Virus record (IMG/VR): IMGVR_UViG_3300027969_000039
Span: 62,001-126,000 of that record
Reading direction: 5' to 3' (one strand)
Length of the DNA stretch: 64,000 nt
Both the position numbers and the translations under genes were made by a program. Positions 10,841-62,060 of this stretch are shown in pieces. The notes under the pieces were generated by a model that had not been told where the DNA came from, made no database searches, and was given only the letters and a program-made list of their open reading frames with translations. Every line of letters begins with the position of its first letter. Position 1 is the first letter of the stretch.

Positions 10841-12523
10841 ATGAGATTTACCGAATTTATATCTGAGAACGAAAAGCCAGGATTATGGGCAAACATCCAT
10901 GCCAAACGTGACCGAATCAAACATGGATCCGGTGAGCGTATGCGTAAGCCCGGAAGCAAGGGTGCTCCAACAGCAGATGCATTGAGAAAGTCAGCAACTG
11001 ATGAAGCAGCTAATCCAGCACAGCAAGCAGCTATCGCTATCAATATGAAGAAGCATCATCAGAAGCCAAAAGGTGTGGCGGAAAGCGAGTTGGATAAATT
11101 TAAAAAGTATACCAGACCAGTTGTAAAGACTGAACCAAAGATCGAAAGAACAACTAATCCTGCAGGAAGAACAACTGACCATGTTGAATGGAAAGTTACA
11201 AGTCCGACGGGCGAGATTCACAGATATAAATCTAAAAAACAAGCACAAGAGCATTTTGATTCTTTTGGTCAGCAAGGTGTGGCGGAAGGCGACATGTATG
11301 GCGATCAAGAAGTAAGTTGGGAAAAAGGTGGTCGTAGAGCCCCAACTGGTGCATTTAAAAATCCTCATACCAGCGCATTAGGTCGAGCATTATATCGTGA
11401 CCTCAGCAAGCAACCTAAATTAAGCCCGCAACAAGTCCAACGCAACAAAGAGCGTTGGGCACAGCGTCAAGCGGAGCGTGAGCAAGGTGTGGCGGAAGGC
11501 TCTGAAACACCACAACAGCAACAAGTTCGTGCTGCAATTACTAAAGGCATGGAAAAATGGGATAGTAATAATAAGGCTACATATCAGAGTCAACCAACTA
11601 AAACTAATTATATGCCACCCAGCGGTTACGCTAGCGATTCATTGACAGGAGTAGATTCCATTGATCCTGATGGTACCGTGGTCATATCTCTTGGAAATAC
11701 TGGTGCCGAAGCCACAATTAAAAAATTAGCAACATTAGGTGGTATGCCCGGCATTAAAACTAGACAACTGCAATCACCAACCGTTTCATCTAGAGGTGTG
11801 GCGGAAGGCAGAAAGCCATTTCGTGATTTAAAATCTTGGGCTGACCACGCAAAATCACAAGGATTGAAAGTAAGCCCATCTGATCACATTGATTGGACAC
11901 ACGATGCTACTGATAAAGAAGGTAAGGTGCGTGGTAGATTTGTGACTACTAGTGTCCCACAAAATAGTCGAGGATTCATCCACCAGCAAGGTGTGGCGGA
12001 GGGAGAGAGTACTATTCTTTCTCCTGGAACACAAGTTACAGTACCTCACAAGGGAAAAATGGTTTCAGGTAAAATCGTTAGATATGATTCAGGCAAAGGT
12101 ATAGAGTCCCCAGCATATATTGTTGATATCAGCGAATACGAATCACTCATCGTTCCAGTTTCTAGAGTGAAGCAAGACATGGATGAAGGCGAGAATTGGT
12201 CAAAGCACAATAACAAACGTGCAGGCGGGATGAGTAAAAAGAGTGTAGCCAGTTATCGCCGCAGTCATCCTGGAAGCAAGATTCAAACAGCAGTCACAAC
12301 TAAGCCTAGTAAATTAAAGAAGGGCAGTAAGGCAGCAAAACGCCGTGCTAGCTTCTGTGCTAGAATGCGTGGCATGAAGAAACATCGTACTGGTGCGAAA
12401 ACAGCACACGATCCAAACAGCAACATAAATAAAAGTTTGCGTAGATGGCATTGCGAAAGTATTGAAGAACTACACGAATTAGTAATGCTTGCCGAACAAT
12501 TTATTAGGAACAATAAGAAATGA
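10841..12523 (+). CDS. modular putative internal-head polyprotein with GVAE-delimited modules
   Basis: N-terminus MRFTEFISE; five GVAE(G/S) joints separating unrelated 65-103-aa segments. Confidence 0.75.
   Translation: MRFTEFISENEKPGLWANIHAKRDRIKHGSGERMRKPGSKGAPTADALRKSATDEAANPAQQAAIAINMKKHHQKPKGVAESELDKFKKYTRPVVKTEPKIERTTNPAGRTTDHVEWKVTSPTGEIHRYKSKKQAQEHFDSFGQQGVAEGDMYGDQEVSWEKGGRRAPTGAFKNPHTSALGRALYRDLSKQPKLSPQQVQRNKERWAQRQAEREQGVAEGSETPQQQQVRAAITKGMEKWDSNNKATYQSQPTKTNYMPPSGYASDSLTGVDSIDPDGTVVISLGNTGAEATIKKLATLGGMPGIKTRQLQSPTVSSRGVAEGRKPFRDLKSWADHAKSQGLKVSPSDHIDWTHDATDKEGKVRGRFVTTSVPQNSRGFIHQQGVAEGESTILSPGTQVTVPHKGKMVSGKIVRYDSGKGIESPAYIVDISEYESLIVPVSRVKQDMDEGENWSKHNNKRAGGMSKKSVASYRRSHPGSKIQTAVTTKPSKLKKGSKAAKRRASFCARMRGMKKHRTGAKTAHDPNSNINKSLRRWHCESIEELHELVMLAEQFIRNNKK
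11072..12001 (+). repeat. five in-frame direct repeats GGTGTGGCGGA(A/G)
   Basis: copies start at 11072, 11276, 11486, 11795 and 11990; spacings 204, 210, 309 and 195 nt; three copies extend to AGCAAGGTGTGGCGGA. Confidence 0.95.
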
Positions 12524-13098
12524 AAAAACTACTAACGATACTTGCATTGACCTTCTTTGGTTCTGCATTTGCCGGAGAGATTACAGTATGTGATGGACAG
12601 TATGCATTATGTGCTGCTAGTACTTGCAAACCAACTAACAAAACAATTACTGGTAATAACGGCGTAGCATACCCAGAAGTAGAATGCCGTTGCCCAATAC
12701 TTAAAGGTCGTGCTATCGCTGATACATCAGCAGGTAACATGCAAGGTTCATGTGCTGCAACTGATGATAAACATGTTTGGAGTTTGTTTGCTCCTAAACT
12801 TTACTACCCACAAGAGGCTAGCAATTTTAGCAACAAACCAAAAGATAAAAAAGTAACTATACAAAAGTGTGATGCTAGTTTGAATCTAGGTGCAAAGTCT
12901 AGCAATTGCTTTAGTTGGAATTGTACGATAGGTAGTGATGGTATTGCACTATGCTCATGCCCAACTGGTCAAGTACCGGCAAATACTGCATTTTTAACAG
13001 AAGCAGGTCAAGGTAACCCAGAAGCATGTTCACAATACCCAGTAAGTTTACCAATCAAAGCGCAAGATAAGGCTGAAGCTAAGGAAGCAAAAAAATGA
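12520..13098 (+). CDS. secreted Cys-rich protein with internal duplication
   Basis: Sec signal ending AFA; 12 Cys in two halves, each with C-x4-C and CxCP. Confidence 0.7.
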   Translation: MKKLLTILALTFFGSAFAGEITVCDGQYALCAASTCKPTNKTITGNNGVAYPEVECRCPILKGRAIADTSAGNMQGSCAATDDKHVWSLFAPKLYYPQEASNFSNKPKDKKVTIQKCDASLNLGAKSSNCFSWNCTIGSDGIALCSCPTGQVPANTAFLTEAGQGNPEACSQYPVSLPIKAQDKAEAKEAKK

Positions 13099-14840
13099 AC
13101 TTTAAAGAATTACACGAAGGCGCAGAGCCAAATATGCCTGGTGCCCCTAGTGGCATCAAGATTATGACACCTCAGCAGTTCGTTGCTAGTGCAGGTGATT
13201 CAAAATCTGATGAAGAGGTATCAGAAGGCGGTAATGCATTCATGCCAGGCATACAAAATACGGCAGAATACAAAGCAGGTTTTGCAACAGGCAAGTTACC
13301 AGTTCCATATCCTGAAGGTACACAACAATATGCTAGCTATTACAAAGGAGTGATTGATAAGTCTACCCCTAATTTAAATAAAGGTACAGCAGGAAATTCG
13401 TTGACTGAATTTGCCCCTAGTGATGACGGTGATGATGGATTTAGTGAAGAAACACTAAAAGGTCTTGCAGCGCAATGGTGGAATGGTGATGAAGATCCTC
13501 GTGTAGAAAAATTATTGATGGCTGCAGGTTGGGAGATTGGTCAAGATGATGGGTATGACAACGGTGGTGTGTTTGTGGTGCGAGCCGGTGATGACAGTGG
13601 TCATAGTTATCTCAGTTGGCCAGCAGAAGAACTAAATCCTAATTTATCAGAAACACATTTAAATAGAATTCGTAGCTTATCTGGATTAGTTGAAGCAACT
13701 AAACTACCAGCACAAACTCGTGATTTGGATAGTCAAGAATTTCAAGACTATATGAAGCGTATCGTTGGTACACCTGATTTAGACAAAGAAGGTAATGTTA
13801 AAGTAGATAAAAAAGGTAACGAAAAGTATACTACTGGCAAGACCAAAGGTGACAAATACAAGATGCCTTACATCCATCGTAGTAGTGTAGTTACATACTT
13901 AAGCCCAGATGGTAAAACATATGATGAAGATGCAGTTAAACAAACATTAGCAATTCGTCCTAAATCATTATTAAAGCAAAATGAAAAGATGAAACATAGC
14001 AATGGTGAGTTTGAACAATTCTTCAATGTTGGATTTGCAGCATTAGTAGGAATTGCATTAGATGAACAAACTAATAAATTAATCATTGTTAATACTTGTC
14101 CAGGCGCTGGCTCTTGTAAAGTAGAGTGCTTTGCTATGAAAGGCGGCAAGATTCAATTCAAGGCTGCATGGCAAAGTGACGGAAGAATACTAACATATCT
14201 ATTAAATGATCCTGATGGTTTCTTCAATCAACTAAGTAGTGAAATATCTGCTGAGGCACAAGCAGCAGCAAAGGGTGATAAGAAATTCCCTAATGGTTGG
14301 CAAACAACAGTTCGCTGGCATGATGCTGGTGACTTCTTTAGTCCAGAATATTTAGACATGGCATTGAAGATGGCTGCTAAACATCCTGATGTTAAGTTCT
14401 ATGCTTATACTAAAATGGCTGGAGCAGCATTAGCGGATAAGCCAGACAACTTCATTATCAATTGGAGTGAAGGTGCTAACACTGCACAAGAGAAACAAAT
14501 CAAAGCACAAGATCCTAAGTTAGATAAAACAAAGAACAGTCGCATCGTTCCAGAGAAACTATTCTATGACTTATTGGCTAAGGACGAGAAGGGCAATTTA
14601 GCAAAGACTCCAGATGGTGCATGGCAACCTGCAGGGCCGCAAGAATTACAACAAATGAAACAGCGTATTGCAACAGAATACGGTATTAGTGCTAACTCTA
14701 TTTTGAGTTATACTGAGTACATGGCTAAGAGAAATTCAATCCCAGCTGGAATGAAGTACAATGTTATTGTTGCACCAGGTGAAGGTGATGTTAGTGCTAA
14801 CGACCCAGGCGTACTAAGTACCTTATTGCTAAGACATTAA
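13095..14840 (+). CDS. modular protein with C-terminal Gp88-like (Cys-cluster) domain
   Basis: MNFKELHEG leader; short modules; then CPGAGSCKVECFA, RWHDAGDF and FYAYTK motifs. Confidence 0.65.
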   Translation: MNFKELHEGAEPNMPGAPSGIKIMTPQQFVASAGDSKSDEEVSEGGNAFMPGIQNTAEYKAGFATGKLPVPYPEGTQQYASYYKGVIDKSTPNLNKGTAGNSLTEFAPSDDGDDGFSEETLKGLAAQWWNGDEDPRVEKLLMAAGWEIGQDDGYDNGGVFVVRAGDDSGHSYLSWPAEELNPNLSETHLNRIRSLSGLVEATKLPAQTRDLDSQEFQDYMKRIVGTPDLDKEGNVKVDKKGNEKYTTGKTKGDKYKMPYIHRSSVVTYLSPDGKTYDEDAVKQTLAIRPKSLLKQNEKMKHSNGEFEQFFNVGFAALVGIALDEQTNKLIIVNTCPGAGSCKVECFAMKGGKIQFKAAWQSDGRILTYLLNDPDGFFNQLSSEISAEAQAAAKGDKKFPNGWQTTVRWHDAGDFFSPEYLDMALKMAAKHPDVKFYAYTKMAGAALADKPDNFIINWSEGANTAQEKQIKAQDPKLDKTKNSRIVPEKLFYDLLAKDEKGNLAKTPDGAWQPAGPQELQQMKQRIATEYGISANSILSYTEYMAKRNSIPAGMKYNVIVAPGEGDVSANDPGVLSTLLLRH

Positions 14841-17537: not shown

Positions 17538-18380
17538 TTAAGTGCCCCATTCGTTTTTGAATAACGGCACTTGTAGTCTATCACTGTACCGCCATCCTTT
17601 TCGCATTGCCATTTCTGCAACCGCCCTATTATTAAGATTGTACACCCGCTCAACGCCACCACAAGGCATAAGATAGACATGACCACGAAAACCCCTCTTA
17701 CGATACGCATTTACTGCCTCCTCAGCTTCTTCCATATCCTCGTTAGTAGCTACTACAAATTTGAGATATGTATGCCCAACTTGGCTATATTCATAGATTA
17801 TGTCTGGGCAGATAGCATCATCCCACTTCTCACCACTGATGCTGAGTTTAGGACTGACGCTGAATGTGATAGAACCCATGCTACGACTTGTACACCATTT
17901 ATTCAAGAAGAATCGTAGATCCTGATGTAATGATTGTGTACCATTAGTCTCAAAAGTTAGTTCTTGTAAGCTACGCATCTTCTCGTTTGAAAGTAAATCA
18001 ACAAAACTACGCTGCCAACCTAGTAGTGGCTCACCACCAGTGATGACAAGATGCTCATCTAACCAACGCTTCTCTGGCAACATATCCATGATACTACTAA
18101 CAATACTATCAGTTTCAAGCATTGGACTTAAGTCTTTGAATCTGGGATCCCAACTCGCATAGCTATCACATCCTGTACTGACAAGTGGTAACATTTTGTA
18201 ATCAGTATACTTTGTCGGGTCGATATTATTTGCTTCCTCGCTTAGTTTACCTTTCGGCATACCAAAGCCTGCACATTTGAAGTTACATCCGAATGTTCGT
18301 AGAAATACTGAGGGGACACCCATGTATCTACCTTCACCTTGAATGCTATAGAATAGTTCTGCTATTTTTAATTTTGCCAT
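17538..18380 (-). CDS. queE: 7-carboxy-7-deazaguanine synthase (radical SAM)
   Basis: ELFYSIQGEG, VFLRTFGCNFKC, ITGGEP, ETNGT, SVSPK and RLQVPL motifs. Confidence 0.9.
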   Translation of the reverse strand: MAKLKIAELFYSIQGEGRYMGVPSVFLRTFGCNFKCAGFGMPKGKLSEEANNIDPTKYTDYKMLPLVSTGCDSYASWDPRFKDLSPMLETDSIVSSIMDMLPEKRWLDEHLVITGGEPLLGWQRSFVDLLSNEKMRSLQELTFETNGTQSLHQDLRFFLNKWCTSRSMGSITFSVSPKLSISGEKWDDAICPDIIYEYSQVGHTYLKFVVATNEDMEEAEEAVNAYRKRGFRGHVYLMPCGGVERVYNLNNRAVAEMAMRKGWRYSDRLQVPLFKNEWGT

Positions 18381-18383
18381 GTT

Positions 18384-19481: not shown

Positions 19482-19960
19482 TCTTTAAATTCATTATCTT
19501 CTCTGTGTCCTTGACGACCTGCCATGTTTGAATCAGTCTCACGTACTTCTACTTTACAGCACCAAACACGTTTGGCTTCTTCACTGCCGCAGTTGGGTAA
19601 GAAGATAGTGTTCACATATTCATATAAGAAATCACTGATACCTTCACATCCTGTCTTTTCAACCTCTGTAATTTTTGCTAGTTTAAGTTTACCTAGATTC
19701 AATAGATGTTCACGCATCGGGTCATCTTGTGCGACTAGTAATGTATGATCGAACCATTCTTCTAATTTTTCTTTGAGTGGTTTCAAGCCACCAAAGTCAG
19801 TCACCCAGTTTCGTGCATCTAATGTATCCGCTTCAAATTCAAAATGAAACGACATTGCGTAACCATGAATCATGTTACAATGACTATCTGCACGCCATTG
19901 ACGATAAGCTACTGGACCTATCTGTTTGTACGTTTTTGTACTGAAATATTTTTTTGCCAT
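19478..19960 (-). CDS. queD: 6-carboxy-5,6,7,8-tetrahydropterin synthase
   Basis: HCNMIHGY, DFGGLK, FDHT, GCE and VRET motifs. Confidence 0.85.
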   Translation of the reverse strand: MAKKYFSTKTYKQIGPVAYRQWRADSHCNMIHGYAMSFHFEFEADTLDARNWVTDFGGLKPLKEKLEEWFDHTLLVAQDDPMREHLLNLGKLKLAKITEVEKTGCEGISDFLYEYVNTIFLPNCGSEEAKRVWCCKVEVRETDSNMAGRQGHREDNEFKD

Positions 19961-19968
19961 GTTGTTCT

Positions 19969-20042
19969 CCTATGTTAATTATAGCATAGGCAGCAGAATT
20001 TGTAAAGCGGGATGATGACCGAAGACCGCTATCTTTATTTAT
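19969..20042 (-). promoter_or_regulatory. late promoter plus structured 5' UTR of queD
   Basis: ATAAATA (20042-20036); AGCGG/CCGCU stem with a cUUCGg-like loop; CCUAUG/CAUAGG hairpin overlapping the RBS. Confidence 0.45.
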
Positions 20043-30591: not shown

Positions 30592-31176
30592 TTATTGAAA
30601 GATTTCTGGGTGACTTTTGCCAAATATTTTCATGGCTTTGCCCGCAGTCATATCTGCTAGCATTTCAATTGGGCTACCAGGATAACTATCGCCCGGTTCG
30701 ATCATATTCAATTCACCTTGACGTACATGGGTTAGTTCGTGATAAACGGTACGCATAATGTCAACCATGTTACGATTAGCAACATATACCCAAACACTGT
30801 TATCGTTTTCTGAATGACGACCGGTGTGATGTCCTTGTTGTGCTTCTTCGGTATTGTAACTGAATTCAAATTTAGGTGTAGATTGTAGATGTAATTCTTT
30901 ACTAGCCCACTGGATGAATTTTTGCATTATTGGATTGTCTTCCAAGAAGTTTGGTTCATCGCTTGCTTCATCTAATTTACCCTTGACCCATTCATCTGGT
31001 GATCTTTTGAATTTGTGAACGAACAAATCATGTAATGCTTTACCAGTGATACGATGTTTACTTGCAATATTTTGCATCAACTTGTCAATAGTATTATAGT
31101 CATATTTTTGCAATGACGGTAGTCTTTTTGATAATTCAATTGCAGCGGATTCAACAATGATGTGTTTTGTGAGCAT
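30592..31176 (-). CDS. HExxH metallopeptidase with leader module
   Basis: start MLTKHIIVE 4 nt after ATAAATA; TVYHELTHVRQ and downstream E. Confidence 0.7.
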   Translation of the reverse strand: MLTKHIIVESAAIELSKRLPSLQKYDYNTIDKLMQNIASKHRITGKALHDLFVHKFKRSPDEWVKGKLDEASDEPNFLEDNPIMQKFIQWASKELHLQSTPKFEFSYNTEEAQQGHHTGRHSENDNSVWVYVANRNMVDIMRTVYHELTHVRQGELNMIEPGDSYPGSPIEMLADMTAGKAMKIFGKSHPEIFQ

Positions 31177-34914: not shown

Positions 34915-35355
34915 TTACGCTCGGGCTTTCTTTAGAGTACTACGAATCATCCATTGATGTTTTTCGTGAGCATCTAGCCTCTCAGCGATAAAGTTTGCTA
35001 TACCTTGTTTGTTTTCTTGTGTAGCTGAAGCAAAGCAATGGTTGAGTAAATCAATCATCTTACTGTTATCTTCGAATAATTCAGCAAACATTAATTCAGC
35101 ACGAGGAATTTTAAGTTGGTCTTGAATGATAGATAATTCAGCGTAGCGTGTTAAACTGCCGGGTGCATAACTATCCAATGTACGAATGTATTCAGCAACT
35201 TTATCTACTGCACTATATACTTCTTCATAGAAATTACCAAAGAATTCGTGATATTCAGGGAAGTCAGGTCCTTCAACATTCCAATGAAAGTTCTGTGCTT
35301 TGATGGATAGTGAATTAACGCTAGCCAATAATACTTTTAAATCTTCTGCTAACAT
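34915..35355 (-). CDS. dps: Dps ferritin-like protein
   Basis: FHWNVEG..F...HEFF..FYEE...VD.VAEYIR; HEKHQWM. Confidence 0.9.
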   Translation of the reverse strand: MLAEDLKVLLASVNSLSIKAQNFHWNVEGPDFPEYHEFFGNFYEEVYSAVDKVAEYIRTLDSYAPGSLTRYAELSIIQDQLKIPRAELMFAELFEDNSKMIDLLNHCFASATQENKQGIANFIAERLDAHEKHQWMIRSTLKKARA

Positions 35356-37369: not shown

Positions 37370-39475
37370 TTATGCTTTCTTATTTTTGATAGATTTTTTG
37401 CTTTCGTATGCTATAGAAGCACCGGGTCTAGAAGAAGATGTATATCCTCTATCTTGTAATCTTGCTGGTTCATCACCAGTAGCTGAATATGGAGTGTTAC
37501 TTAGATTGTTTGAATCATGTTGTCTCTGATATTCTTGGTTAGATGCATCCATTTCATCTTTACTAACTAATGGAGGTTGAACATCTGCACGATGTAATTT
37601 GAAATTATAAAACTTGATACCTTTTGATTTCATAAAATCTTTAACTGCTTCTGAAGCCTGTCCCGGGGAGTTATATTCTGTTCCAAGATTGATATCTTTT
37701 GTAATTGATTTACCATCTACTTGAAAAGTAATTTGAGCAACAATAGGTTGTATTTCATGTGCATGTGCTCCTGCCCCGCCCAATGCAGCAGCACCTGCTA
37801 GTGCAGCACCTGCTAAATTACTTTTCCAACCTTCTTCTACTTTTTTCTTAGCAGCATCCCATGCAGCATCAGTCTTTACATTGTATTCTTTGCCACCAGC
37901 GCCAATGTCAGCAACTCTGCTACCAATATCTTTTTTAGTTTTTACAACAGCTTTATTGTGTTTGTTCACACTCTTTTGCATTAATTTACCGAAGTCTGGA
38001 TTGCGTTTAAGGGCCCGTTCATCTTCTGGACTTCTTGAACTTGCTGCTGCTGTTCTCAAATCACCTAAGTCAAATGCTTCCCTCATTCCTGCTACTTTGC
38101 TACCTTGAGTGTTAGCTGCGGTACCGGTACGGCTGGCTTTCATCTTATCTCCACCGCCACCAATGTGTCTACTACCATAATCGGTCTTGTCTGCCTTGCG
38201 TGGCTTTTTATATGGTAATTGTTGAACATTACCACCTTTACTTAAAAATGCTTGTAATGCAGAATCATCTTCCGCTACACCTTCAGCACTATCAGTAGCT
38301 AATACATCTGCAACTGTGCCAATATGATCGTTTGCTACTGTGATATAACTGTATTCCCATGCATCTAATTGATTACCTTGCTTCAACATCTGATGTATCT
38401 GCTTGCAATTCTTTGCAATATTACGCAACTCTCCCATAGCCATTTGTGGAATCTGTTCTCCACCATCACTATCTTCGTATGCAAGTCCACCGGCGATAAC
38501 ACCAGCACCTTCCGTTACCCCTTGCTCTGCTTGATCCATGTACCATTTAAGAATTTTTAGTAATTCAGTAAGTGATTCTTGCCCTTCAGGATTACAGTAG
38601 TTCTTAGCCATTCTAGCTAAGTCGTACATTGTTCGTAAGTTGCTGGTGCTTACATCACCTTCATTCATACCTATCTTACGCATCACCGCTGGAGAAGCGA
38701 TTTTTTTTATCGCTTCTTTTTTTCCTACTTGTGCTGCCCTATTGCTTATTTTTTGTGATACATCATCATAATGTTTTGCCAATGGATTCATATAGCCGCC
38801 ACCTAATGCATTATGCACCTCAGGCTTCATTGCTTGATTACTTTTGTTTTTAGCTAATTGTGCGGATCTTTGTAACAGATCAGAACTGAGTTCATTGATA
38901 GCATCACTATCAGGTTGCATCTCTTGACTGCTGATTAGATAATCCATCACATTAACCATCATACCTTTTGCTGCGCCAATCTTCTCTGATACCCACTCGG
39001 GGAATTCAGATTGAACGGATAATCTCTTATCTAAATCACTAGCAGCACGGGCGATAGTGTGTAGACTGTTCTTTAATGTGTGACCTTCGTGTTCACCATG
39101 GTCTAAGTCATGCTTAACAAATCCAGTTCTTCTTAGTCTACCTTGACCCGGGATAACGATTAAGTCTTGTTCTGCAATTTCCTCTTCGTTGACTTTTGTC
39201 ATGCTTGCTTTGATTTCAGCTTTTGTTTTTCCATATTTCTTTTGAAATTCAGCAGTAGTTAACTCTGTTAAATCTATTGATAGTTCTTTAACTTTGCTTT
39301 CTGTAATGCTATTAGCGTAAGGCCCTTTCTTTTTAGCCTTCCCTTTCATTACTTGTTGTACAGGTTTCAGTCCCGGAACATTAACATTTTCACGGGTTTG
39401 AGTCATCATAGGCTTTGCTACGGTTGCGACTGACCCTGCTGTGGTTGAATTTTCTACTATTTGCTTAAATCTCAT
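37370..39475 (-). CDS. modular putative internal-head polyprotein
   Basis: MRFKQIVE leader; joints QGVTEG, EGVAED, INEL, MNEG and VEEG; ATAAATA upstream (39505-39499). Confidence 0.7.
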   Translation of the reverse strand: MRFKQIVENSTTAGSVATVAKPMMTQTRENVNVPGLKPVQQVMKGKAKKKGPYANSITESKVKELSIDLTELTTAEFQKKYGKTKAEIKASMTKVNEEEIAEQDLIVIPGQGRLRRTGFVKHDLDHGEHEGHTLKNSLHTIARAASDLDKRLSVQSEFPEWVSEKIGAAKGMMVNVMDYLISSQEMQPDSDAINELSSDLLQRSAQLAKNKSNQAMKPEVHNALGGGYMNPLAKHYDDVSQKISNRAAQVGKKEAIKKIASPAVMRKIGMNEGDVSTSNLRTMYDLARMAKNYCNPEGQESLTELLKILKWYMDQAEQGVTEGAGVIAGGLAYEDSDGGEQIPQMAMGELRNIAKNCKQIHQMLKQGNQLDAWEYSYITVANDHIGTVADVLATDSAEGVAEDDSALQAFLSKGGNVQQLPYKKPRKADKTDYGSRHIGGGGDKMKASRTGTAANTQGSKVAGMREAFDLGDLRTAAASSRSPEDERALKRNPDFGKLMQKSVNKHNKAVVKTKKDIGSRVADIGAGGKEYNVKTDAAWDAAKKKVEEGWKSNLAGAALAGAAALGGAGAHAHEIQPIVAQITFQVDGKSITKDINLGTEYNSPGQASEAVKDFMKSKGIKFYNFKLHRADVQPPLVSKDEMDASNQEYQRQHDSNNLSNTPYSATGDEPARLQDRGYTSSSRPGASIAYESKKSIKNKKA

Positions 39476-39528: not shown

Positions 39529-40935
39529 TTAGATTTTGCCGTTTGCTTTAGCTGTTGGGGGTATTCCAGCACGACTGGTGTTCCAGTAGAATGCTTTTGC
39601 GTTCTTTTTTATACTGTCAGGGTGTACATCTACAGTTAGTGCTGTCTTGAATCGCGGGTCATTCTTTTGTTTTTCGCTTGGAATATATCCACTTGCTTCA
39701 CTTATTCCACCACGATATTGATTATCTTTAACGCCAGCATAAGGACTTACTGGTGGAGTTTTTTCTGCTGCAAATTGCATGGTGTTGTATTCTTCCGCCA
39801 CACCTTTTACTTTTGGATCTAAATCTTTCAAGCTATTCACATCACCTTGCTTGCGCCACTTTGACCACATTTTTTGTCCAGCGGTAGTTTGTGTTTCAGA
39901 AGGCAATACATTGACACCTAACATGCGAATCAAAGCATACATATTTGCGGCTATACCTTGTCCTTGATATTTAGGATCGACTCTGGTCTTCATGCTTGTT
40001 ACACCTTGCACTTCACCTGTATATAGATTTCGTGCTTTGGCAAATTGTGCATCTCCAATTGGATTGAGATTTTTTTTATCATATGCTTTGATAGATAAGA
40101 AATCATTTTTCTTCCCTGCATTTGTAACATGATAAAGTATTCCGTTTATGTCTTGTTTGAAATCTAATCCTGGTTTCCATAACTCATTGTTGAATTGTTC
40201 TTCTTCATCTATGTTCTGATACATAGTCTCAAACGATAACTTCTCACTATGTAACTTGTCTCTTAAATCATATAATTTTGTAATATATCCTTGACTACGC
40301 AACATCTTATATGCTAAATTTTCAGGACCAAACTCACCACCTTTATCTAATCCTGCTTGTCTATATCGTTTGATCGTGTCTATTATATGTTTTACTTTAC
40401 TATATTTTCTTGACTGTAGTGCTATCTCTATCAAACCTAATAACTTTTCATACTTGCTTTTAGTAGAAGTTTGGTCAAAATCACTTCTACGCTTAGTGGG
40501 TATTCTTATCCACTGATCATTCATTACACTGTATTCACCTAAACTTACAACAGGTTGTCTACTGTCTTGTACATATAATTCTACTGGAATTTTATGAATT
40601 GTTATATCATGTGTATCATTGTATATTGTTTTCTTTGCTGTAAATAACTCTTTATATACTTCATTGGTAGGTAAATTACCCATGTCTACTAATATATGTA
40701 AATCTAAATCACTGTGCTTTGTGTAGCTAAATGCAGCATTACTACCTGAGATTGTTATGTCTTTTACATCTAAATCATGTACACCTAATTCTTCTAAAAA
40801 ATCTGCTGCTATCAGCATAAGCTGGTCTCTAACATCTGGTCGCAATTTAGTTTCATTCCATAACTTAGGATTAAGTTTATCGTGGAATGTTACCGCATCA
40901 CTTAGTTTAAAGCTATTAAGTTCTTTTTGATTCAT
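39529..40935 (-). CDS. Pol-beta-family nucleotidyltransferase fused to a GNAT module
   Basis: GSNAAFSYTKHSDLDLH (GS..DxD) and VELYVQD; VDPKYQGQGIA (GNAT motif A) followed by KGVAEE. Confidence 0.8.
   Translation of the reverse strand: MNQKELNSFKLSDAVTFHDKLNPKLWNETKLRPDVRDQLMLIAADFLEELGVHDLDVKDITISGSNAAFSYTKHSDLDLHILVDMGNLPTNEVYKELFTAKKTIYNDTHDITIHKIPVELYVQDSRQPVVSLGEYSVMNDQWIRIPTKRRSDFDQTSTKSKYEKLLGLIEIALQSRKYSKVKHIIDTIKRYRQAGLDKGGEFGPENLAYKMLRSQGYITKLYDLRDKLHSEKLSFETMYQNIDEEEQFNNELWKPGLDFKQDINGILYHVTNAGKKNDFLSIKAYDKKNLNPIGDAQFAKARNLYTGEVQGVTSMKTRVDPKYQGQGIAANMYALIRMLGVNVLPSETQTTAGQKMWSKWRKQGDVNSLKDLDPKVKGVAEEYNTMQFAAEKTPPVSPYAGVKDNQYRGGISEASGYIPSEKQKNDPRFKTALTVDVHPDSIKKNAKAFYWNTSRAGIPPTAKANGKI
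39793..39804 (-). repeat. exact copy of the GGTGTGGCGGAA repeat
   Basis: + strand TTCCGCCACACC; variants at 38270-38281 (GGTGTAGCGGAA) and 38510-38521 (GGGGTAACGGAA). Confidence 0.9.
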
Positions 40936-42570: not shown

Positions 42571-44289
42571 TTATTTTTCGTCTAGGTAATCAAATTTAGG
42601 TTCAACAGGTAATCCGTCGCTACGCTCACGCTTTTTCATTTGTTCGCTGTCTCGTGCGGCTCTTAGTTTAGCGATAGGTGCCCCATCACCTGCTAAGTCT
42701 TTTGCCACATGAGCCATAACATCACTTTCTTTTTCCATTACAGTTGCTATACCAACACCAACGCCTAAGCTAGCTAGTGTATATTTGAGTGTGTCTACCC
42801 AATTCTTGCCGTTCATTCTTGCACCCACTGCAGGGACGATTGAGTTCAATATACCTTGCATCATTAGATTAGTTTGATAGGGTGTTAGTTGTATATTATT
42901 AGCAAGATTTATTGCGCCACCGCCTAGTAGTGCTGCTATAGCTGTAATGATTCCACCTTGTAAGTATGGATTGTGTTTACCTTCTTTAAATATATCAATC
43001 AACTTTTTGCGAACAACTGGGTCATCAGTCTTTTGTAATAAGTGTCGTGCTTTCTCTACATAGTTTTCTACTTCTTGTTCTTGTGCTTTTTGCATTACAG
43101 GTGTATAGAACTTCATAGTAGCATCAACTATTGGATCAGTTTCTTTATCTTCTTCAATAGGTTCAGTAGTAGCACCCATCTTCATTTTTTCTTGCACCGG
43201 CATTGCCTTCTTAACTTTTTTAGTATTGTACACTCCAAATTCTCCACCACCGTTGGTTTGGCTTGTCCAACCTGGTAATGACGGTAATACTCTTTTAATC
43301 ATTCTAGCATACAACGCTCTACGACCGGGTTCTGCGGCTTGGAAATATAACAATGAAGGTTTAAATTTTTTCACATACTGAACTATAGCATTGACTACAA
43401 TTCCAAACACTTCTGCGGCTGCCCCTGTACCTTCGATACCCTGTTTAACAACTGGAAATCCGCCTTTCATATCCTGTGTAATTTGTTCAAAACTAACAAA
43501 TTTGCTATTTTCATATACTTCGTCTGAATCAACATAATCATATGGACTCATGTTCTCTGGTCCAATATATGGTTCTAAGAAATCCAATTGATATTCTACT
43601 CCATTGCTAGCAGTGAAGTTAAATTTAATCATATCAGGATTACTAGTGTCCCATTGTGAAGTAGCTGTAGATGCTTTAGTATCAAAAACTTCTTGTAAAT
43701 TAACATCAACACCCATGCCAGCATCTAATAGCTTAACGACATTTGCTGCTAATGCGGGGTTACTTTGTGTAGCTGGATACAAACTCATTACCATTGCAGT
43801 CTTGCGTTTCTCGTTTAGTTTAGGCCACATTGCACGAATCTCACTTGCACTGGTAATGCCAGGACCAAACTCTACTGTTGGTAGATATTCAATGTAAGCA
43901 TGTTGTCCAAATGGTTTTAAATCTTTGCCTGTGTATGGTTGAAAGTATGCAGGACTTCCATCTTTCTTTGTGCCACCTGGTTTAGGTTGCTCATTCTTAT
44001 CTTTTTCACTACGCACAAATATTAATACATCACTGTCAGGATTATACTTGCTTGTTATTTCTTGTGGTCTGAATGGACTACGAACTTGTACAAATTGTCC
44101 TTTCTTTACACCTGCTACTTTAGCAAGTTTTTCTTTGATTGCAAAAGGAAAAGGTCTTTCACTAGTATCGTCTGATGCCGCAACATATACATCAGCACCC
44201 GGAAAGGTTTGTAATGCTGATTGATATAGTGAGGCATGACCCGCATGAAACGGGTGAAAGCCTCCGGGCATTACGACTATTGTACTCAT
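42571..44289 (-). CDS. HxGH nucleotidyltransferase fused to additional modules
   Basis: PGGFHPFHAGH, VRSEKD and SASEIR; then a domain shared with 58507-59604 and a hydrophobic module. Confidence 0.7.
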   Translation of the reverse strand: MSTIVVMPGGFHPFHAGHASLYQSALQTFPGADVYVAASDDTSERPFPFAIKEKLAKVAGVKKGQFVQVRSPFRPQEITSKYNPDSDVLIFVRSEKDKNEQPKPGGTKKDGSPAYFQPYTGKDLKPFGQHAYIEYLPTVEFGPGITSASEIRAMWPKLNEKRKTAMVMSLYPATQSNPALAANVVKLLDAGMGVDVNLQEVFDTKASTATSQWDTSNPDMIKFNFTASNGVEYQLDFLEPYIGPENMSPYDYVDSDEVYENSKFVSFEQITQDMKGGFPVVKQGIEGTGAAAEVFGIVVNAIVQYVKKFKPSLLYFQAAEPGRRALYARMIKRVLPSLPGWTSQTNGGGEFGVYNTKKVKKAMPVQEKMKMGATTEPIEEDKETDPIVDATMKFYTPVMQKAQEQEVENYVEKARHLLQKTDDPVVRKKLIDIFKEGKHNPYLQGGIITAIAALLGGGAINLANNIQLTPYQTNLMMQGILNSIVPAVGARMNGKNWVDTLKYTLASLGVGVGIATVMEKESDVMAHVAKDLAGDGAPIAKLRAARDSEQMKKRERSDGLPVEPKFDYLDEK

Positions 44290-44729
44290 TGTTGATTGCC
44301 TGTTATTGCCTGTAATAAGGCTCTGGCTACTACACGGTCTTTTTCTTGTTCTTCATCTGATAGTTGAGCATATGGAATGTTCATCAACTTTTCGCGCTGC
44401 TGAAGTTTTGCTTCTAATTTACCGGCAGCTTTTAGTTTCTCTGTGTCATCAAATTGTTCTGGGTGTGCTACAAACGCTTTAGCAGTTACATTCCATCCTT
44501 GATGTATCGCATCACTAATCTTTTCAATATCTTTTTCACCTGCTGTAATTGCTTTCAAAGCAAATTCAGCCGACTTCATATTAGCTTTCCATCCAAATGT
44601 ATTGCCAGGACTACTGCGACCATAGTGGTATGCATCATCCAATGCTTTGTCACTTATTTGTGCTAGTTGACCAATGTCCATGCTTTCGTTTAGCATGTCA
44701 ATATATTTTCTAAAAAGTTCTGTACTCAT
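44286..44729 (-). CDS. RyR-repeat-like domain protein
   Basis: AIHQGW...PYAQLSDEEQEKDR pattern; leader ending MLNE. Confidence 0.6.
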   Translation of the reverse strand: MSTELFRKYIDMLNESMDIGQLAQISDKALDDAYHYGRSSPGNTFGWKANMKSAEFALKAITAGEKDIEKISDAIHQGWNVTAKAFVAHPEQFDDTEKLKAAGKLEAKLQQREKLMNIPYAQLSDEEQEKDRVVARALLQAITGNQQ

Positions 44730-49702: not shown

Positions 49703-50251
49703 TTATAATCCTGCCATTGCTATGTATGCTTGTATCTCACTATCTGGTTTACCATATAATTTTACAGTTTCTAGTCCGGCGCGTCTACGCATCTCATTTA
49801 AATCTTCTTGGTTTTCTTCTTCAACACGATATTCGTGTGGACTAATAGTAATTACTTGCTTCAATACTTCCGGGTCAGCATCGTATTCTTCTTCATCAAT
49901 AGAAATAGTCCAATCATTTATTGTTAACTCGGTAAGTGTTTCTAAATCATCAATCAATTCTACAATGCGTTCTGGAACTTTTGTTCTACGCTTCATCTCA
50001 ACAAATACTAGATACTTACCAGGACTTAATTCACCTTCGCTTAAGCTAGAATCTAGTATCCAATCATATCCACGCTCAAACCAGTCAACCAAATCATTTC
50101 CTGCTGCTTCGCTTTTAACAACAAATGCCAATGTAACAATGTCACTGTCTTTGCCCATCTTAGCAGCATACTCATCTACAGAAACGGTAGGTTCTATTTG
50201 ATCTACCATATCCAAATAATCTAAGCCTTCATTAATGATTCTTCTTGTCAT
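49703..50251 (-). CDS. hypothetical phage protein
   Basis: 182-aa ORF; N-terminus MTRRIINE. Confidence 0.75.
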   Translation of the reverse strand: MTRRIINEGLDYLDMVDQIEPTVSVDEYAAKMGKDSDIVTLAFVVKSEAAGNDLVDWFERGYDWILDSSLSEGELSPGKYLVFVEMKRRTKVPERIVELIDDLETLTELTINDWTISIDEEEYDADPEVLKQVITISPHEYRVEEENQEDLNEMRRRAGLETVKLYGKPDSEIQAYIAMAGL

Positions 50252-58506: not shown

Positions 58507-59604
58507 TTATGATGTTCCTTCGCTAAACCACGGATCAATGATAACCGGTTGTCCGTTACTTCGTTGCATGACATTTGCCGTATGCAAATCCCATCCAAAT
58601 TTATTGATATTTCCTGTACTATATAATAACTGCATCACAGTATATAGCTGTTTATACATACTGTAAGTTTTTTTACTTGCAGGATTTTCTAGTATACTTT
58701 GCCATGTTCTAGCAAAAGTACCAGAATAGTTTGGACTAAAAAAATACCACGGGTGTCCATTTGTTAATTCGCTTTCCACAGTTGACCATGGTTTATTTCC
58801 ACTAACATAATCACTTAATAACCAAACCATACCTTGTAAGAAACCACCTTTTTCTATAGGGGATAATCTCTCCATCTCAATCTGAGTGTAGTCTTTGCCA
58901 TTGATATCGATGGTGTTCACTTCATTGAATCTAGGAACGCATGGTAAATCTTGATGACTCATTGAAAACTCATAAAACTTACGAAATACTTGTTCAGCTT
59001 TGCTACCCGCATCCTCTGGCATCAATATCTTGATCACATGACTATCATCTTTGGCAAAAACAGTAGCATCAGCACCGCTGCCAACATGATGATATCCAGC
59101 CGCTCTTAGTTGTTTCCAAATCTCATTGCTATTCTTAGTAGCTACTTCAGCTTCATCCAAATTATCTTTGACAATCTTGAAGTAGTCATCATACTCACCT
59201 GAATCAATAGGTGCCGCATGGTAACCGGGTACTTTGATTCTATTCAACATACGCTGGTATAATTTAGTTCTATTGTCATCTGCTTTGTGTGAAGTGAATG
59301 TAAGTTGATCAGGATGATAGCTAGAAATCAAATCTTTGATTGACTCAATGACAAATGAGAATACTTGTAATTCATTACCAGAACCAGTCTTTCTAAAAGT
59401 TGTACCAGTTCCGTCCTTTTCATATTCAGTAAAGTCTATTTCCCATACTGATTTACCTTCATCATCGTCATACTGTGAAGCATTAAAAACAATAACACGA
59501 CCACCTATCGTAGCCTTAGTGGTGTATAAGTCTGGAGTTGCTCTAACTACTTCACTAGAGACATTGCTAGTAAATACTTCGGTTATAAATTCTGTGGCTC
59601 TCAT
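58507..59604 (-). CDS. leader + unknown domain + protein kinase-like domain
   Basis: MRATEFITE leader; [20 protein letters not shown] and IIDP kinase motifs. Confidence 0.8.
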
Positions 59605-60155
59605 AGACTCTTACCCCAACGGGTATTAATCACATTCCAGTTTATGATTTTCCACTGTTCTTTGATGTACTTTTTCTTATCACTGCCGTAATCTAATATG
59701 AAAGCATGTTCCCACCAGTCAATCAATAACAATATGTCATTGCGTACTTGATGATTTACTATCGTTTTAATCTTGCCGTCTGTAGCTAAGTATATCCAAC
59801 CACTACCCTGTATCTTCATGGCCTCAATCTCAAACTCAGACTTCATGTTATCATAATCACCGTAATGTTTATTAACGAATCCCATCATAGGGCCGTTGGG
59901 CTTGTTATTGTTTCTCACTTCACGGAACTGCGGGAATAATGTATTATGCAGGAAAGCGCCTGCATAGTTGAAATCTCTATCACCCTCTTTATTATTGTAT
60001 CGTTCAGCATACCCGTGGGCTAGTTTCCCATAGTGCAAATCCAATGTGTCTTTGGATAGTACAGGACTGACTTCAGCCGGAGTGAAGTTTAAGGGTATGA
60101 TTTCTATGTCTTGAGGCTTACTCTTTTCCTCAAGCAATGTAATAATGTCACGCAT
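59601..60155 (-). CDS. Fe/Mn superoxide dismutase with leader
   Basis: LHYGK..Y, LHN, QGSGW and DWWEHA; four metal-ligand positions present. Confidence 0.88.
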   Translation of the reverse strand: MRDIITLLEEKSKPQDIEIIPLNFTPAEVSPVLSKDTLDLHYGKLAHGYAERYNNKEGDRDFNYAGAFLHNTLFPQFREVRNNNKPNGPMMGFVNKHYGDYDNMKSEFEIEAMKIQGSGWIYLATDGKIKTIVNHQVRNDILLLIDWWEHAFILDYGSDKKKYIKEQWKIINWNVINTRWGKSL

Positions 60156-60176
60156 AACATGTATTTATGCGTATTG

Positions 60177-60392
60177 TTACCTGCGCCGAGTAATGCGTCC
60201 TTTAGATAGGTCGTAGGGTGAGAATTCTACTTCCACCGTGTCTCCGAGCAATATTTTAATGTCGTTCTTACGCATACGACCACTGATGTAACCAGTAATC
60301 ACATTACTTGGATTCATCTGTACTTTGAACATAGCATTGGGTAATACATCGATCACCTTACCGTCCATCTTGATTCCCTCTTCTTTTGCCAT
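60177..60392 (-). CDS. infA: translation initiation factor IF-1
   Basis: MAKEEGI...LPNAMF...ISGRMR..I.IL.GD.V.VE.SPYDL.KGRI. Confidence 0.95.
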   Translation of the reverse strand: MAKEEGIKMDGKVIDVLPNAMFKVQMNPSNVITGYISGRMRKNDIKILLGDTVEVEFSPYDLSKGRITRRR

Positions 60393-61267: not shown

Positions 61268-61488
61268 GTTTTCTTTAATATATAACGGCCTTCTTCATCT
61301 AATCCAACTTCAATATTATCTCCCTCTTTCCAGCCCATTTGGTCAAGCAATGCTTGTGGGATAGGTAATAATAAGTCATCGTCATTGTCAGGATTTGGTT
61401 GCGTTATTACTTCATAACGCATTCTTTCTTGTCCAGGATTAGGTCTAGCCATGTGTCTAGTATAATGTATTTGTTGATTACTAATCAA
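61264..61488 (-). CDS. AbrB/MazE-type DNA-binding domain protein
   Basis: LLLPIPQALLDQMGWKEGDNIEV; start may be at 61452. Confidence 0.7.
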   Translation of the reverse strand: MISNQQIHYTRHMARPNPGQERMRYEVITQPNPDNDDDLLLPIPQALLDQMGWKEGDNIEVGLDEEGRYILKKT

Positions 61489-62060
61489 GTTTTATGGATG
61501 AATGGTCCGTAAATCTTTTCAAGTTCTTGGATAGTTTGAGCAACAGTACTATCTTCATGCTTTACTGCAATGCCACCTGCACTACTCCATGCATCTAAAT
61601 ATTTGCCATAATCATCTACTAGTACATTTGGGATGCCACCATTTAATGCATGTTTGTACTTTGCACCAGTGAATATTGCACTACCACTAGTTCCCGGGTT
61701 ATATTGGTCTAGCCAATCTTTTTTAGCTTCTATGCTAGCCTTCGCATACGGACCGCGCAACGGAGCAGACAATACGGTGAACGGGATTTTATTATCATTT
61801 AGCCACATTACAATACGCATACCACCTGTTAGTGGCTTTAAGTCTCTAAAAAACTGATAAACTTGTTCCGGGCTACTTGTTGCTAATGCTTGTATATCTT
61901 CTTCTCGTCTTGGAATCTCTTTGTAACTAGAAACCCCATGCTTTCCAGCCCAGGCGCCAAAGAAATCTGCTTGAACTCCATCCATATCTAGGTATAGATG
62001 TGGCATCTTTGCTTCTGGTTCAGACTCAATTTCTTCTAATAATTCTCGTATACGCATCAT
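61485..62060 (-). CDS. HAD-family 5'(3')-deoxyribonucleotidase with leader
   Basis: YLDMDGV, VLSAP, K.DWL and LVDD motifs; leader MRIRELLEE. Confidence 0.82.
   Translation of the reverse strand: MMRIRELLEEIESEPEAKMPHLYLDMDGVQADFFGAWAGKHGVSSYKEIPRREEDIQALATSSPEQVYQFFRDLKPLTGGMRIVMWLNDNKIPFTVLSAPLRGPYAKASIEAKKDWLDQYNPGTSGSAIFTGAKYKHALNGGIPNVLVDDYGKYLDAWSSAGGIAVKHEDSTVAQTIQELEKIYGPFIHKT

What the first reader, a model, noticed from the sequence alone, without database searches (positions are those of the whole stretch)
10841..62060. Family of late genes with T4 capsid-targeting-like leaders fused to diverse enzymes
Seen N-termini: MRFTEFISE (10841), MNFKELHE (13095), MLTKHIIVE (31176), MRTNEFLAE (37367), MRFKQIVE (39475), ...KYIDMLNE (44729), MTRRIINE (50251), MRATEFITE (59604), MRDIITLLEE (60155) and MRIRELLEE (62060). 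Several sit just downstream of ATAAATA. Known: T4 internal proteins IPII/IPIII carry an approximately 10-aa capsid-targeting sequence (MKTYQEFIAE) removed by gp21 after Glu. Inference: this phage may package a kinase, SOD, HAD nucleotidase, zincin peptidase, Gp88-like and RyR-like domains and polyproteins for injection, acting before any transcription.
Basis: partly seen in the sequence, partly recalled or inferred. Interest (0 to 1): 0.8.

Follow-up and report, generated by a model that had tools for sequence, protein, structure and literature searches.

The report
T4-like capsid-targeting leaders on modular cargo
An uncultured freshwater jumbo phage related to T4 puts a short, T4-like "pack me into the head and cut here" tag on a set of late enzymes and multi-module proteins, so it probably loads them into the virion for delivery with the DNA, although packaging has not been shown directly.

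Summary
Seven (10841, 13095, 31176, 37367, 39475, 59604, 62057) form a robust family, M-[RKN]-x-x-[EQH]-[FLI]-[ILV]-x-E. A regex fitted after seeing the leaders gives 7 hits against 0.1-0.2 expected. Two (44729, 60155) are variant N-terminal extensions ending in [LI]-x-E. One (50251) is unsupported.

The leader is a separable module. In hundreds of metagenomic homologues it is kept while the sequence directly after its Glu differs. It closely resembles the T4 CTS MKTYQEFIAE.

In 110 of 120 kinase homologues a kinase-module start was recognised, and there the module always follows [VIL]-x-E. That Glu belongs either to the leader or to an internal linker such as QGVAE, which matches the T4 gp21 cleavage motif L/I-x-E.

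The phage belongs to the T4-superfamily jumbo group. Its cultured relative PA5oct has a gp21-type protease and carries the SOD-like orthologue among proteins detected in virion preparations. All leader genes lie in units headed by a T4-late-like [GC]ATAAATA motif.

Packaging, cleavage and injection remain inferred, and this genome's own protease gene was not located.

Unexpectedly, the GVAEG linker is conserved at the nucleotide level (GGTGTGGCGGARGG) in unrelated contexts. This is unexplained and may mark a module-shuffling joint.

The parts
10841..12523 (+). 560-aa basic (pI 10.0) multi-module protein. It has the leader MRFTEFISE (10841-10867), a GLWANIHAKR..MRKPGSKGAP module, four further modules and a C-terminal DUF6321. 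Five GVAE joints and one divergent joint (QDMDEG, DNA repeat copy at 12171-12192) separate the modules.
11072..12003 (+). Five in-frame copies of the joint GGTGTGGCGGARGG (11072, 11276, 11486, 11795, 11990), each encoding G-V-A-E-(G/S).
10778..10785 (+). GATAAATA late-promoter-like motif 56 nt upstream of 10841.
13095..14840 (+). 581-aa protein with the leader MNFKELHE|G and a GP88 domain (residues 293-466). Orthologues start MNFKELxEG, MKIxHLMEG or MRIQHLLEG.
30592..31176 (-). 194-aa protein with the leader MLTKHIIVE|S and an HELTH motif. Orthologues start MLTEHIIIES, MKSYQIITES or MKIHQVINES. The motif GATAAATA lies at 31181-31188, with 4 nt (CATA) between it and the ATG, and this arrangement is conserved in orthologous loci.
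37370..39475 (-). 701-aa multi-module protein with the leader MRFKQIVE|N and joints QGVTE|G and EGVAE|D. A Gly/Ala-rich hydrophobic segment follows V-E-E|G. GATAAATA lies at 39499-39506.
35355..37367 (-). 670-aa protein with the leader MRTNEFLAE|L. It is the next gene in the same late unit and has the same C-terminal hydrophobic segment after V-D-E|G.
39529..40935 (-). It starts MNQKELNS (leader-like, but without the final Glu) and contains one joint copy, GGTGTGGCGGAAGA (39791-39804, KGVAEE).
44286..44729 (-). 147-aa protein with a weak RyR-like match and a variant 15-aa leader ending L-N-E|S.
58507..59604 (-). 365-aa protein: leader MRATEFITE|V, a DUF6934/GNAT-like domain, the junction NLDE|AEV (residues 149-153), then a protein-kinase-like module.
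59601..60155 (-). 184-aa Fe/Mn-SOD-like protein with the 15-aa extension MRDIITLLEEKSKPQ. CATAAATA lies at 60162-60169. The PA5oct orthologue gp261 is flagged as detected in virion preparations.
61485..62060 (-). NT5C/HAD 5'-nucleotidase with an N-terminal extension of 17-18 residues, (M)MRIRELLEE plus an acidic spacer, placed before MPHLYLDMDGV. GATAAATA lies at 62063-62070.
49703..50251 (-). It is not supported as a leader gene.

Best explanation
The leaders are capsid-targeting propeptides of the T4 type. Late in infection the phage makes a set of cargo proteins: a kinase, an SOD-like protein, a 5'-nucleotidase, a GP88-domain protein, an HExxH protein and several basic multi-module proteins. 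Each starts with about 9 residues, M-R/K-x-x-E/Q-F/L-I/L-x-E. This peptide binds the prohead core, so the cargo is enclosed when the shell forms. The gp21-type prohead serine protease then cuts after the Glu. It also cuts at internal [V/I/L]-x-E junctions such as QGVAE|G, releasing individual modules that stay in the head with the DNA and enter the next host with it.

Shown: the motif and its statistics, its modularity, the equivalence of leader and junction, the late-type promoter motifs, and the presence of the protease in relatives.

Inferred: binding to the core, cleavage, retention in the head and injection.
For: (1) Similarity to the T4 CTS. T4 ipII and ipIII start MKTYQEFIAE|A. In T4, residues 4 and 7 drive targeting and residues 8 and 10 drive processing, and gp21 cuts after L/I-x-E. 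The window leaders keep an aromatic or hydrophobic residue at the equivalent positions, plus I/L-x-E. One orthologue of the 31176 gene even starts MKSYQIITE.

(2) Modularity. About 85 of 120 kinase homologues start MR[AIS]xEF..E although the sequence right after the Glu belongs to unrelated families. The NT5C, GP88, HExxH and 701-aa families also keep the leader. Cultured-phage NT5C homologues align only from residue 17-21 onward.

(3) Junction logic. A kinase-module start was recognised in 110 of 120 homologues, and there it always follows h-x-E. In stand-alone 223-aa forms that Glu is the leader's. In fusions it belongs to a linker (QGVAE, PIDE, NLDE, PLDE, DVVE). Across 38 distinct contexts P1 is E in 38/38 and P3 is V/I/L in 35/38, against an 18% background. 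The motif [VIL]xE[GAS] occurs 21 times in the leader proteins against 8.6 +/- 2.9 in shuffles, and is not enriched in other proteins.

(4) Structure. AlphaFold gives pLDDT below 50 for exactly the leader (residues 1-12) and the junction (149-156), between two folded domains.

(5) Lineage. The DNA polymerase is 43-49% identical to those of Atu_ph07, Phosso, CBB and GAP32. There is synteny with PA5oct, which has the head module portal-gp150-gp151-gp152 (gp21-type protease)-scaffold-MCP. Group 2 jumbo phages carry the gp21 orthologue (PMC7824862).

(6) Prohead-core link. The small gene between portal and protease in 82 related loci, and PA5oct gp150 (detected by MS), start with the same kind of peptide: MRFNDL.., MKINDIITE, MILREFIYF.

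(7) Timing. All leader genes lie in units headed by [GC]ATAAATA, and none of the 11 genes next to a sigma-70-type promoter has a leader. There are no leader genes in the next 57 kb of replication and metabolic genes.

(8) Virion detection in a relative. PA5oct gp261 (SOD-like orthologue) and gp349 (the DUF6934 domain of the kinase protein) are flagged as ESI-MS/MS virion proteins.

(9) Cargo properties. The predicted fragments of the 560-aa protein are small and basic (pI 8.2-10.3), like the T4 internal proteins.
Against: There is no proteomic, N-terminal or transcript evidence for this phage.

The protease gene of this genome was not found. The scans were capped at 80 loci, and a walk along the 110-kb JGI contig carrying the same gene order stopped at a 6459-aa gene.

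The PA5oct mass-spectrometry list also contains obvious non-structural enzymes such as RNR, ThyA and ligase, so detection there is weak evidence.

V at P3 is not documented for T4 gp21.

Some homologues lack the final Glu (MRANEFTNF..).

The invariant E|AE could partly belong to the kinase fold.

The nucleotide-level conservation of the GVAEG joint shows that something beyond a protease site acts on the linkers.
Confidence: 0.6

Rival explanations
1. The leaders and linkers are mainly recombination and architectural joints. They would be conserved ends that allow in-frame shuffling of protein modules between co-infecting phages, with no proteolysis or packaging involved.
For: The GVAEG linker is coded by GGTGTGGCGGARGG in 56 unrelated contexts, although GTG and GCG are rare codons here (13% and 7%). 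The 14-mer gives 128 hits in 748 kb of leader-family loci. It gives none in 1.4 Mb of head loci, in PA5oct or in the neighbouring 57 kb. The same upstream modules combine with different kinase subtypes at the junction. Module number varies among GP88 orthologues.
Against: This does not explain the N-terminal leader, whose codons vary (AGA versus CGT for Arg). It does not explain the non-GVAE junctions that keep only [VIL]-x-E, the late-unit location, or the T4 CTS similarity. It is compatible with the main explanation rather than exclusive of it.
Confidence: 0.15
2. The leader is a tag for the phage-encoded Clp/AAA+ machinery or for another cytoplasmic sorting step, not for the capsid. This genome carries a ClpA-like gene at 46000-48261, and ClpX, ClpS and ClpP just beyond the window.
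For: The phage carries an unusually complete Clp set plus DnaJ. N-terminal Met-basic-hydrophobic peptides can act as ClpX signals (general knowledge).
Against: This does not account for the internal [VIL]-x-E junctions, for the identity with the T4 CTS pattern, or for the same peptide on the prohead-core gene next to the protease. PA5oct has the same Clp set but only 2-3 leader-like genes.
Confidence: 0.07
3. The conserved start is an mRNA-level translation-initiation feature of late, possibly leaderless, transcripts rather than a protein signal.
For: Late-type motifs end only 3-7 nt from the ATG of several genes (62060, 60155, 31176), so some late mRNAs may be leaderless.
Against: Other late-motif genes (58116, 50874, 45257, 550) have no leader. 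Three leader genes (13095, 37367, 59604) are internal, translationally coupled genes. Conservation is at the amino-acid level with conservative replacements and differing codons.
Confidence: 0.05
4. The resemblance is chance, or a generic helical N-terminus.
For: [LI]-x-E near the N-terminus is common: 26 matches among the 91 ORFs.
Against: There are seven strict hits against 0.1-0.2 expected, although the pattern was fitted after seeing the leaders. The leader is conserved across hundreds of homologues with unrelated downstream sequence.
Confidence: 0.03

Closest known systems
T4 internal proteins IPI/IPII/IPIII with the capsid targeting sequence MKTYQEFIAE, cut by the gp21 prohead protease
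   Same: An extreme N-terminal peptide of 9-10 aa with the same pattern (M, basic, aromatic/hydrophobic, E/Q, F, I/L, x, E). A Glu-terminal L/I-x-E site. Late genes. A conserved leader on diversified, often basic, cargo. A T4-superfamily phage.
   Different: The leader is one residue shorter, with R instead of K. The cargo includes enzymes and 560-701-aa multi-module proteins with internal junctions. The family is much larger (at least 7-9 genes in 64 kb). Nothing has been shown experimentally.
T4 Alt, an ADP-ribosyltransferase packaged and processed by gp21 and then injected
   Same: A host-takeover enzyme made late, carried in the head and acting at the start of the next infection. This is the same logic as proposed for the kinase, which matches a PHROG family annotated as a protein kinase that inhibits host transcription.
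   Different: The enzyme families differ, and packaging is unproven here.
Ejection and inner-body proteins of phiKZ, 201phi2-1 and SPN3US, cut after Glu by a gp21 homologue
   Same: Many head-internal proteins processed at short x-x-E motifs, with several sites per protein (PMC9026906, PMC5694885).
   Different: Those phages use long propeptides (over 100 aa) and S/A/G-x-E sites. They belong to jumbo group 1, which has virion RNA polymerases. Here the leader is short and T4-like.
Polyvalent proteins of phages and conjugative elements (Iyer et al. 2017, as cited in PMC7824862)
   Same: Multi-domain proteins proposed to be delivered with the DNA, carrying kinase, GNAT and peptidase modules in shuffled combinations.
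   Different: The match to Pfam Kinase-PolyVal is below cut-off. Here the modules are smaller and are joined by a defined [VIL]-x-E or GVAEG junction. An N-terminal CTS-like leader is present.
Modular shuffling cassettes of T4-type phages: conserved promoter/stem-loop (PeSL) and conserved CTS flanks of T-even IP loci (recalled from the literature, not checked here)
   Same: Short conserved nucleotide stretches flank variable units and could serve as recombination joints.
   Different: Here the conserved 14-15 nt lies inside coding sequence, in frame, between protein modules.

Membership tests
T4-type capsid targeting sequence (CTS) propeptide | A peptide of about 10 residues at the extreme N-terminus, with hydrophobic or aromatic residues at the positions equivalent to T4 residues 4 and 7 | tested here: met
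   [52 protein letters not shown] and MRIRELLEE compared with MKTYQEFIAE. There are 7 hits against 0.1-0.2 expected.
T4-type capsid targeting sequence (CTS) propeptide | Ends in the gp21 site L/I-x-E followed by a small residue | tested here: met
   All seven end in I/L-x-E. Family-wide, P1 is E in 38/38 and P3 is V/I/L in 35/38 at the equivalent junction.
T4-type capsid targeting sequence (CTS) propeptide | The same genome encodes a gp21-type (S77) prohead protease | tested here: inconclusive
   It is present in relatives: PA5oct gp152, K64-1, pEa_SNUABM_47 and hundreds of IMG/VR jumbo contigs. This genome's own gene was not reached.
T4-type capsid targeting sequence (CTS) propeptide | Late expression | tested here: inconclusive
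   A T4-late-like [GC]ATAAATA motif heads every unit that holds a leader gene. There are no transcript data.
T4-type capsid targeting sequence (CTS) propeptide | The protein is found in the virion with the leader removed | not testable with these tools
   Only indirect evidence exists: PA5oct gp261 and gp349 are flagged ESI-MS/MS.
Fe/Mn superoxide dismutase (59601-60155) | Pfam Sod_Fe_C and Sod_Fe_N above cut-off | tested here: met
   Sod_Fe_C scores 78.7 bits (cut-off 20.9). Sod_Fe_N scores 20.2 bits, below its cut-off of 27. His/Asp ligand positions look conserved by eye.
NT5C 5'(3')-deoxyribonucleotidase (61485-62060) | Pfam NT5C above cut-off and the DxDGV motif | tested here: met
   30.4 bits against a cut-off of 24.8. 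The motif LDMDGV is present.
GP88 (13095-14840) | Pfam PF17338 above cut-off | tested here: met
   91.7 bits against a cut-off of 24.4.
Protein kinase / Kinase-PolyVal (58507-59604) | A profile match and a kinase-like fold | tested here: inconclusive
   Pfam Kinase-PolyVal scores 17.9 bits, below its cut-off of 27. PHROG 15752 (protein kinase) scores E=3e-10. Foldseek hits to VRK, MK2 and APH kinases have E of 0.01 or worse.
Zincin metallopeptidase (30592-31176) | HExxH within a recognisable zincin domain | tested here: inconclusive
   HELTH is present, but there is no Pfam match even at E=1.
RyR domain (44286-44729) | Pfam PF02026 above cut-off | tested here: not met
   15 bits, E=0.03, against a cut-off of 27.4.

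The most novel reading that the evidence does not exclude
The leader-tagged late proteins form a cassette system for virion-delivered effectors. Modules would be joined by a dedicated in-frame joint of 14-15 nt (GGTGTGGCGGARGG, encoding GVAEG) with two roles. In DNA it would be the recombination point that lets phages swap effector modules. In protein it would be the prohead-protease site that releases the modules inside the capsid.
Probability: 0.25. Interest if true: 0.8.

Novelty: new variant of a known kind. Interest (0 to 1): 0.62.

Why it matters
If this is right, a simple sequence grammar predicts the set of proteins a whole clade of uncultured freshwater jumbo phages carries into the cell. 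The grammar is a leader, modules and [VIL]-x-E joints.

The predicted cargo includes a T7-gp0.7-like kinase, an SOD-like protein, a nucleotidase and basic DNA-associated modules. This would extend the T4 capsid-targeting principle, also used as a protein-delivery tool, to a distant and much more diverse group.

The nucleotide-conserved joint would be a rare case of a defined in-frame shuffling point for protein modules.

Tried and rejected
1. DNA search of 10 kb of the window against cultured phages found no match. tblastn of the 701-aa protein also found none.

2. I tried to find this genome's own gp21 gene. Two profile or protein scans of IMG/VR returned only the best 80 of about 600 loci each, and none came from the window's contigs. 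A walk with the look-up of encoding contigs covered about 57 kb beyond the window end, then stopped at a 6459-aa gene that exceeds the look-up limit.

3. The loose [LI]-x-E criterion was rejected as uninformative.

4. Candidate 50251 was rejected. The PA5oct orthologue lacks the peptide and is not flagged by mass spectrometry.

5. Foldseek of the two-domain kinase model gave only weak hits: GNAT-like for the N-domain and kinase-like for the C-domain.

6. I asked whether the GLWANIHAKR and DUF6321 modules imply the leader. They do not. T7-like cyanopodoviruses and T4-like cyanophages carry these modules without it.

7. Literature searches in the held library for a described CTS-like system in group-2 jumbo phages found none.
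Full report
**What the window is**

The 64-kb window is 100% identical, over the regions compared, to IMG/VR contigs 3300027733_001253 (231 kb) and 3300027969_000039 (303 kb). Its genes also lie on a 364-kb JGI freshwater-metagenome contig. It has no near DNA match among cultured phages.

- The family-B DNA polymerase (26944-29649, minus strand) is 43-49% identical to those of Sinorhizobium phage Phosso, Agrobacterium phage Atu_ph07, Vibrio phage 2.275.O, Xanthomonas XaC1, CBB and GAP32.
- About 23 window proteins have orthologues in Pseudomonas phage PA5oct, in largely collinear order. They include RNase H, the DNA polymerase, a DnaJ-ClpA pair and the RFC-like clamp loader.
- The phage therefore belongs to the T4-superfamily jumbo 'group 2.2'. 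Members use T4-type head genes, including the gp21 (S77) prohead protease (PMC7824862).
- PA5oct has the head module portal-gp150-gp151-gp152 (protease)-gp153-major capsid protein.

**Checking the observation**

All ten N-termini exist at the stated places. The loose motif [LI]-x-E near the N-terminus is common, with 26 matches among the 91 ORFs, so it has no weight by itself.

A stricter pattern, written after seeing the leaders, hits seven gene starts: 10841, 13095, 31176, 37367, 39475, 59604 and 62057. The expectation is 0.08-0.19, with a maximum of 3 in 2000 trials, and only 3 of 479 internal Met match.

- 60155 (SOD-like) and 44729 (weak RyR-like) carry variant N-terminal extensions ending in L-x-E. 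They have family-level support.
- 50251 has no support.

**The leader is a separable module**

- Among 120 homologues of the kinase protein, about 85 start MR[AIS]xEF[ITL]xE. The residues right after the Glu fall into many unrelated families.
- NT5C homologues have M[RK]Ix[ED]L[FLM]E[ED], then a spacer of variable length, then the invariant MPHLYLDMDGV. Cultured-phage NT5C proteins align only from residue 17-21 onward.
- GP88-domain orthologues start MNFKELxEG, MKIxHLMEG or MRIQHLLEG.
- Orthologues of the HExxH protein start MLTEHIIIES, MKSYQIITES or MKIHQVINES.
- Orthologues of the 701-aa protein start MRFKQIVE, MKIKDICE or MKISDIFE.
- Codons differ between leaders (AGA versus CGT for Arg), so conservation is at the protein level.

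**Relation to the T4 CTS**

T4 ipII and ipIII start MKTYQEFIAE|A. In T4, residues 4 and 7 carry targeting and residues 8 and 10 carry processing, and gp21 cuts after L/I-x-E (PMC9026906). The window leaders align as M-R-(F/A/T)-x-E-F-I-x-E. This keeps the aromatic/hydrophobic, F, I/L and E positions.

The small gene between portal and protease, in the position of T4 gene 67, starts with the same kind of peptide in 82 related loci and in PA5oct gp150, which was detected by mass spectrometry. Examples are MRFNDL.., MKINDIITE, MILREFIYF and MKSIEFLTE. This ties the motif to prohead-core proteins of this group.

CTS-like starts also occur in nt-1 (MIEFLTE) and in a T4-like cyanophage (MKSFNQFLSE).

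**Junction grammar**

A kinase-module start (AE[VTA]xTxN[SA]..) was recognised in 110 of 120 homologues, and there it is always preceded by h-x-E.

- In the 223-aa stand-alone forms that Glu is the last residue of the leader (MRANEFTNE|AEV..).
- In fusions it is the last residue of a linker: QGVAE|, PIDE|, NLDE|, PLDE| or DVVE|.
- Across 38 distinct contexts P1 is E in 38/38 and P3 is V/I/L in 35/38, against an 18% background.
- The leader Glu and the linker Glu are therefore positionally equivalent. This is what a common protease site predicts.

Within the window:

- The 560-aa protein has five GVAE joints and one divergent joint. The predicted fragments are 65-173 aa and basic (pI 8.2-10.3), as the T4 internal proteins are.
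- [VIL]xE[GAS] occurs 21 times in leader proteins against 8.6 +/- 2.9 in shuffles. It is not enriched in the other proteins (38 against 34.9).
- An AlphaFold model of the kinase protein has pLDDT below 50 exactly at residues 1-12 and 149-156, between two folded domains.

**Timing and location**

GATAAATA occurs ten times, nine of them on the main coding strand. Most copies lie just upstream of a gene start, with a few 67-76 nt upstream. CATAAATA precedes 60155.

- Every leader gene is the first or a downstream gene of such a unit.
- None of the 11 genes next to a sigma-70-type promoter has a leader.
- The motif directly in front of the ATG of the 31176 gene is conserved in orthologous loci.
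- The next 57 kb of the genome holds Clp genes, a ligase, a porin, a radical-SAM block and other replication or metabolic genes. It has no leader gene.

**Indirect virion evidence**

PA5oct gp261 is the orthologue of the SOD-like protein (36% identity over the full length, N-terminus ..YISIAE|AA). PA5oct gp349 carries the DUF6934 domain of the kinase protein and starts MHLFELFDQ. Both are flagged as ESI-MS/MS virion proteins.

That list also includes clearly non-structural enzymes, so this evidence is weak.

**Unexpected finding**

The GVAEG linker is conserved at the nucleotide level.

- In 56 non-redundant contexts with unrelated flanks it is coded GGT GTG GCG GA(A/G) GG(C/T). In the window's codon usage GTG is 13% of Val codons and GCG is 7% of Ala codons.
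- The 14-mer, allowing one mismatch, occurs six times in the window. All six are in frame, in leader-type genes, and none is expected by chance.
- It occurs 128 times in 748 kb of loci around leader-family genes. It is absent from 1.4 Mb of head-module loci, from 250 kb of PA5oct and from the neighbouring 57 kb.
- It is also used at a QGVAE|AE kinase junction in an unrelated contig.
- Unrelated GVAEG repeats in a tail-fibre-like protein use ordinary codons.

A protease site alone does not explain this. Possible readings are a microhomology joint for in-frame module exchange, or an RNA-level signal such as a GG-N3-GG-N1-GG-N2-GG two-tetrad quadruplex or an SD-like pause site. It remains unresolved.

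**Verdict**

I put about 0.6 on T4-type capsid targeting plus gp21-type processing.

It is a new variant of a known kind. [quoted passage not shown] Here it is expanded to enzymes and multi-module proteins with a defined junction grammar, in an uncultured jumbo clade.

Packaging, cleavage and injection are inferred, and this genome's own protease gene was not located. The zincin and RyR labels are not supported at curated thresholds.

Noticed in passing
window 11072-12003 (+) and 39791-39804 (-); loci L258-L380, L391: The linker GVAEG between modules is coded by a nearly invariant GGTGTGGCGGARGG in unrelated contexts, despite rare GTG and GCG codons. The 14-mer is absent from head-module loci, from PA5oct and from neighbouring genome regions.
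   Followed up: partly
window 62063-62070, 60162-60169, 50880-50887, 31181-31188, 555-562 (all on the minus strand): The late-type motif [GC]ATAAATA ends only 3-7 nt before the ATG. If transcription starts a few nt downstream as in T4, these late mRNAs would be leaderless or nearly so.
   Followed up: no
window 1756-3177 (-) and 20493-20765 (-): A tandem family of small ORFs starting MNERI[KRE]QL. Each is preceded by the conserved sequence ..CATTTCGGAGTTGAAGA, because the previous ORF ends ..HFGVEE.
   Followed up: no
window 17538-21445 (-) and 29957-30565 (-): A gene set like that for 7-deazaguanine synthesis: GTP cyclohydrolase I, PTPS/QueD, a radical-SAM QueE-like gene (orthologue of PA5oct 7-carboxy-7-deazaguanine synthase), a PP-loop ATPase that could be QueC-like, and a radical-SAM/SPASM gene. 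This hints at modified DNA bases.
   Followed up: partly
window 34915-35355 (-): A ferritin/Dps-like protein encoded directly downstream of the two large leader proteins in the late unit that starts at 39475.
   Followed up: no
window 46000-49061 (-); L384-L386: The phage carries DnaJ, ClpA-like, ClpX, ClpS, ClpP, HSP20, ribosomal protein S21 and an IF-1/eIF-1A-like gene (60177-60392). The DnaJ-ClpA pair is syntenic with PA5oct gp297-298.
   Followed up: partly
window 42571-44289 (-) and 58507-59604 (-): The DUF6934-like domain occurs twice, in the kinase protein and in a 572-aa cytidylyltransferase-like protein. In other contigs the nucleotidyltransferase itself carries a canonical leader (MRLRQLFE..).
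   Followed up: partly
window 35355-37367 (-) residues 575-600 and 37370-39475 (-) residues 546-574: A shared Gly/Ala-rich hydrophobic segment, EGWKSxLxxAALAGAxALGGA, placed right after V-[DE]-E. It may be a membrane-active module released by cleavage.
   Followed up: no
L386-L389 (JGI contig Ga0114975_10000017, 30-57 kb beyond the window end): Porin and PstS-like genes, a block of about seven radical-SAM/SPASM genes, a 2116-aa ORF and a 6459-aa ORF.
   Followed up: no
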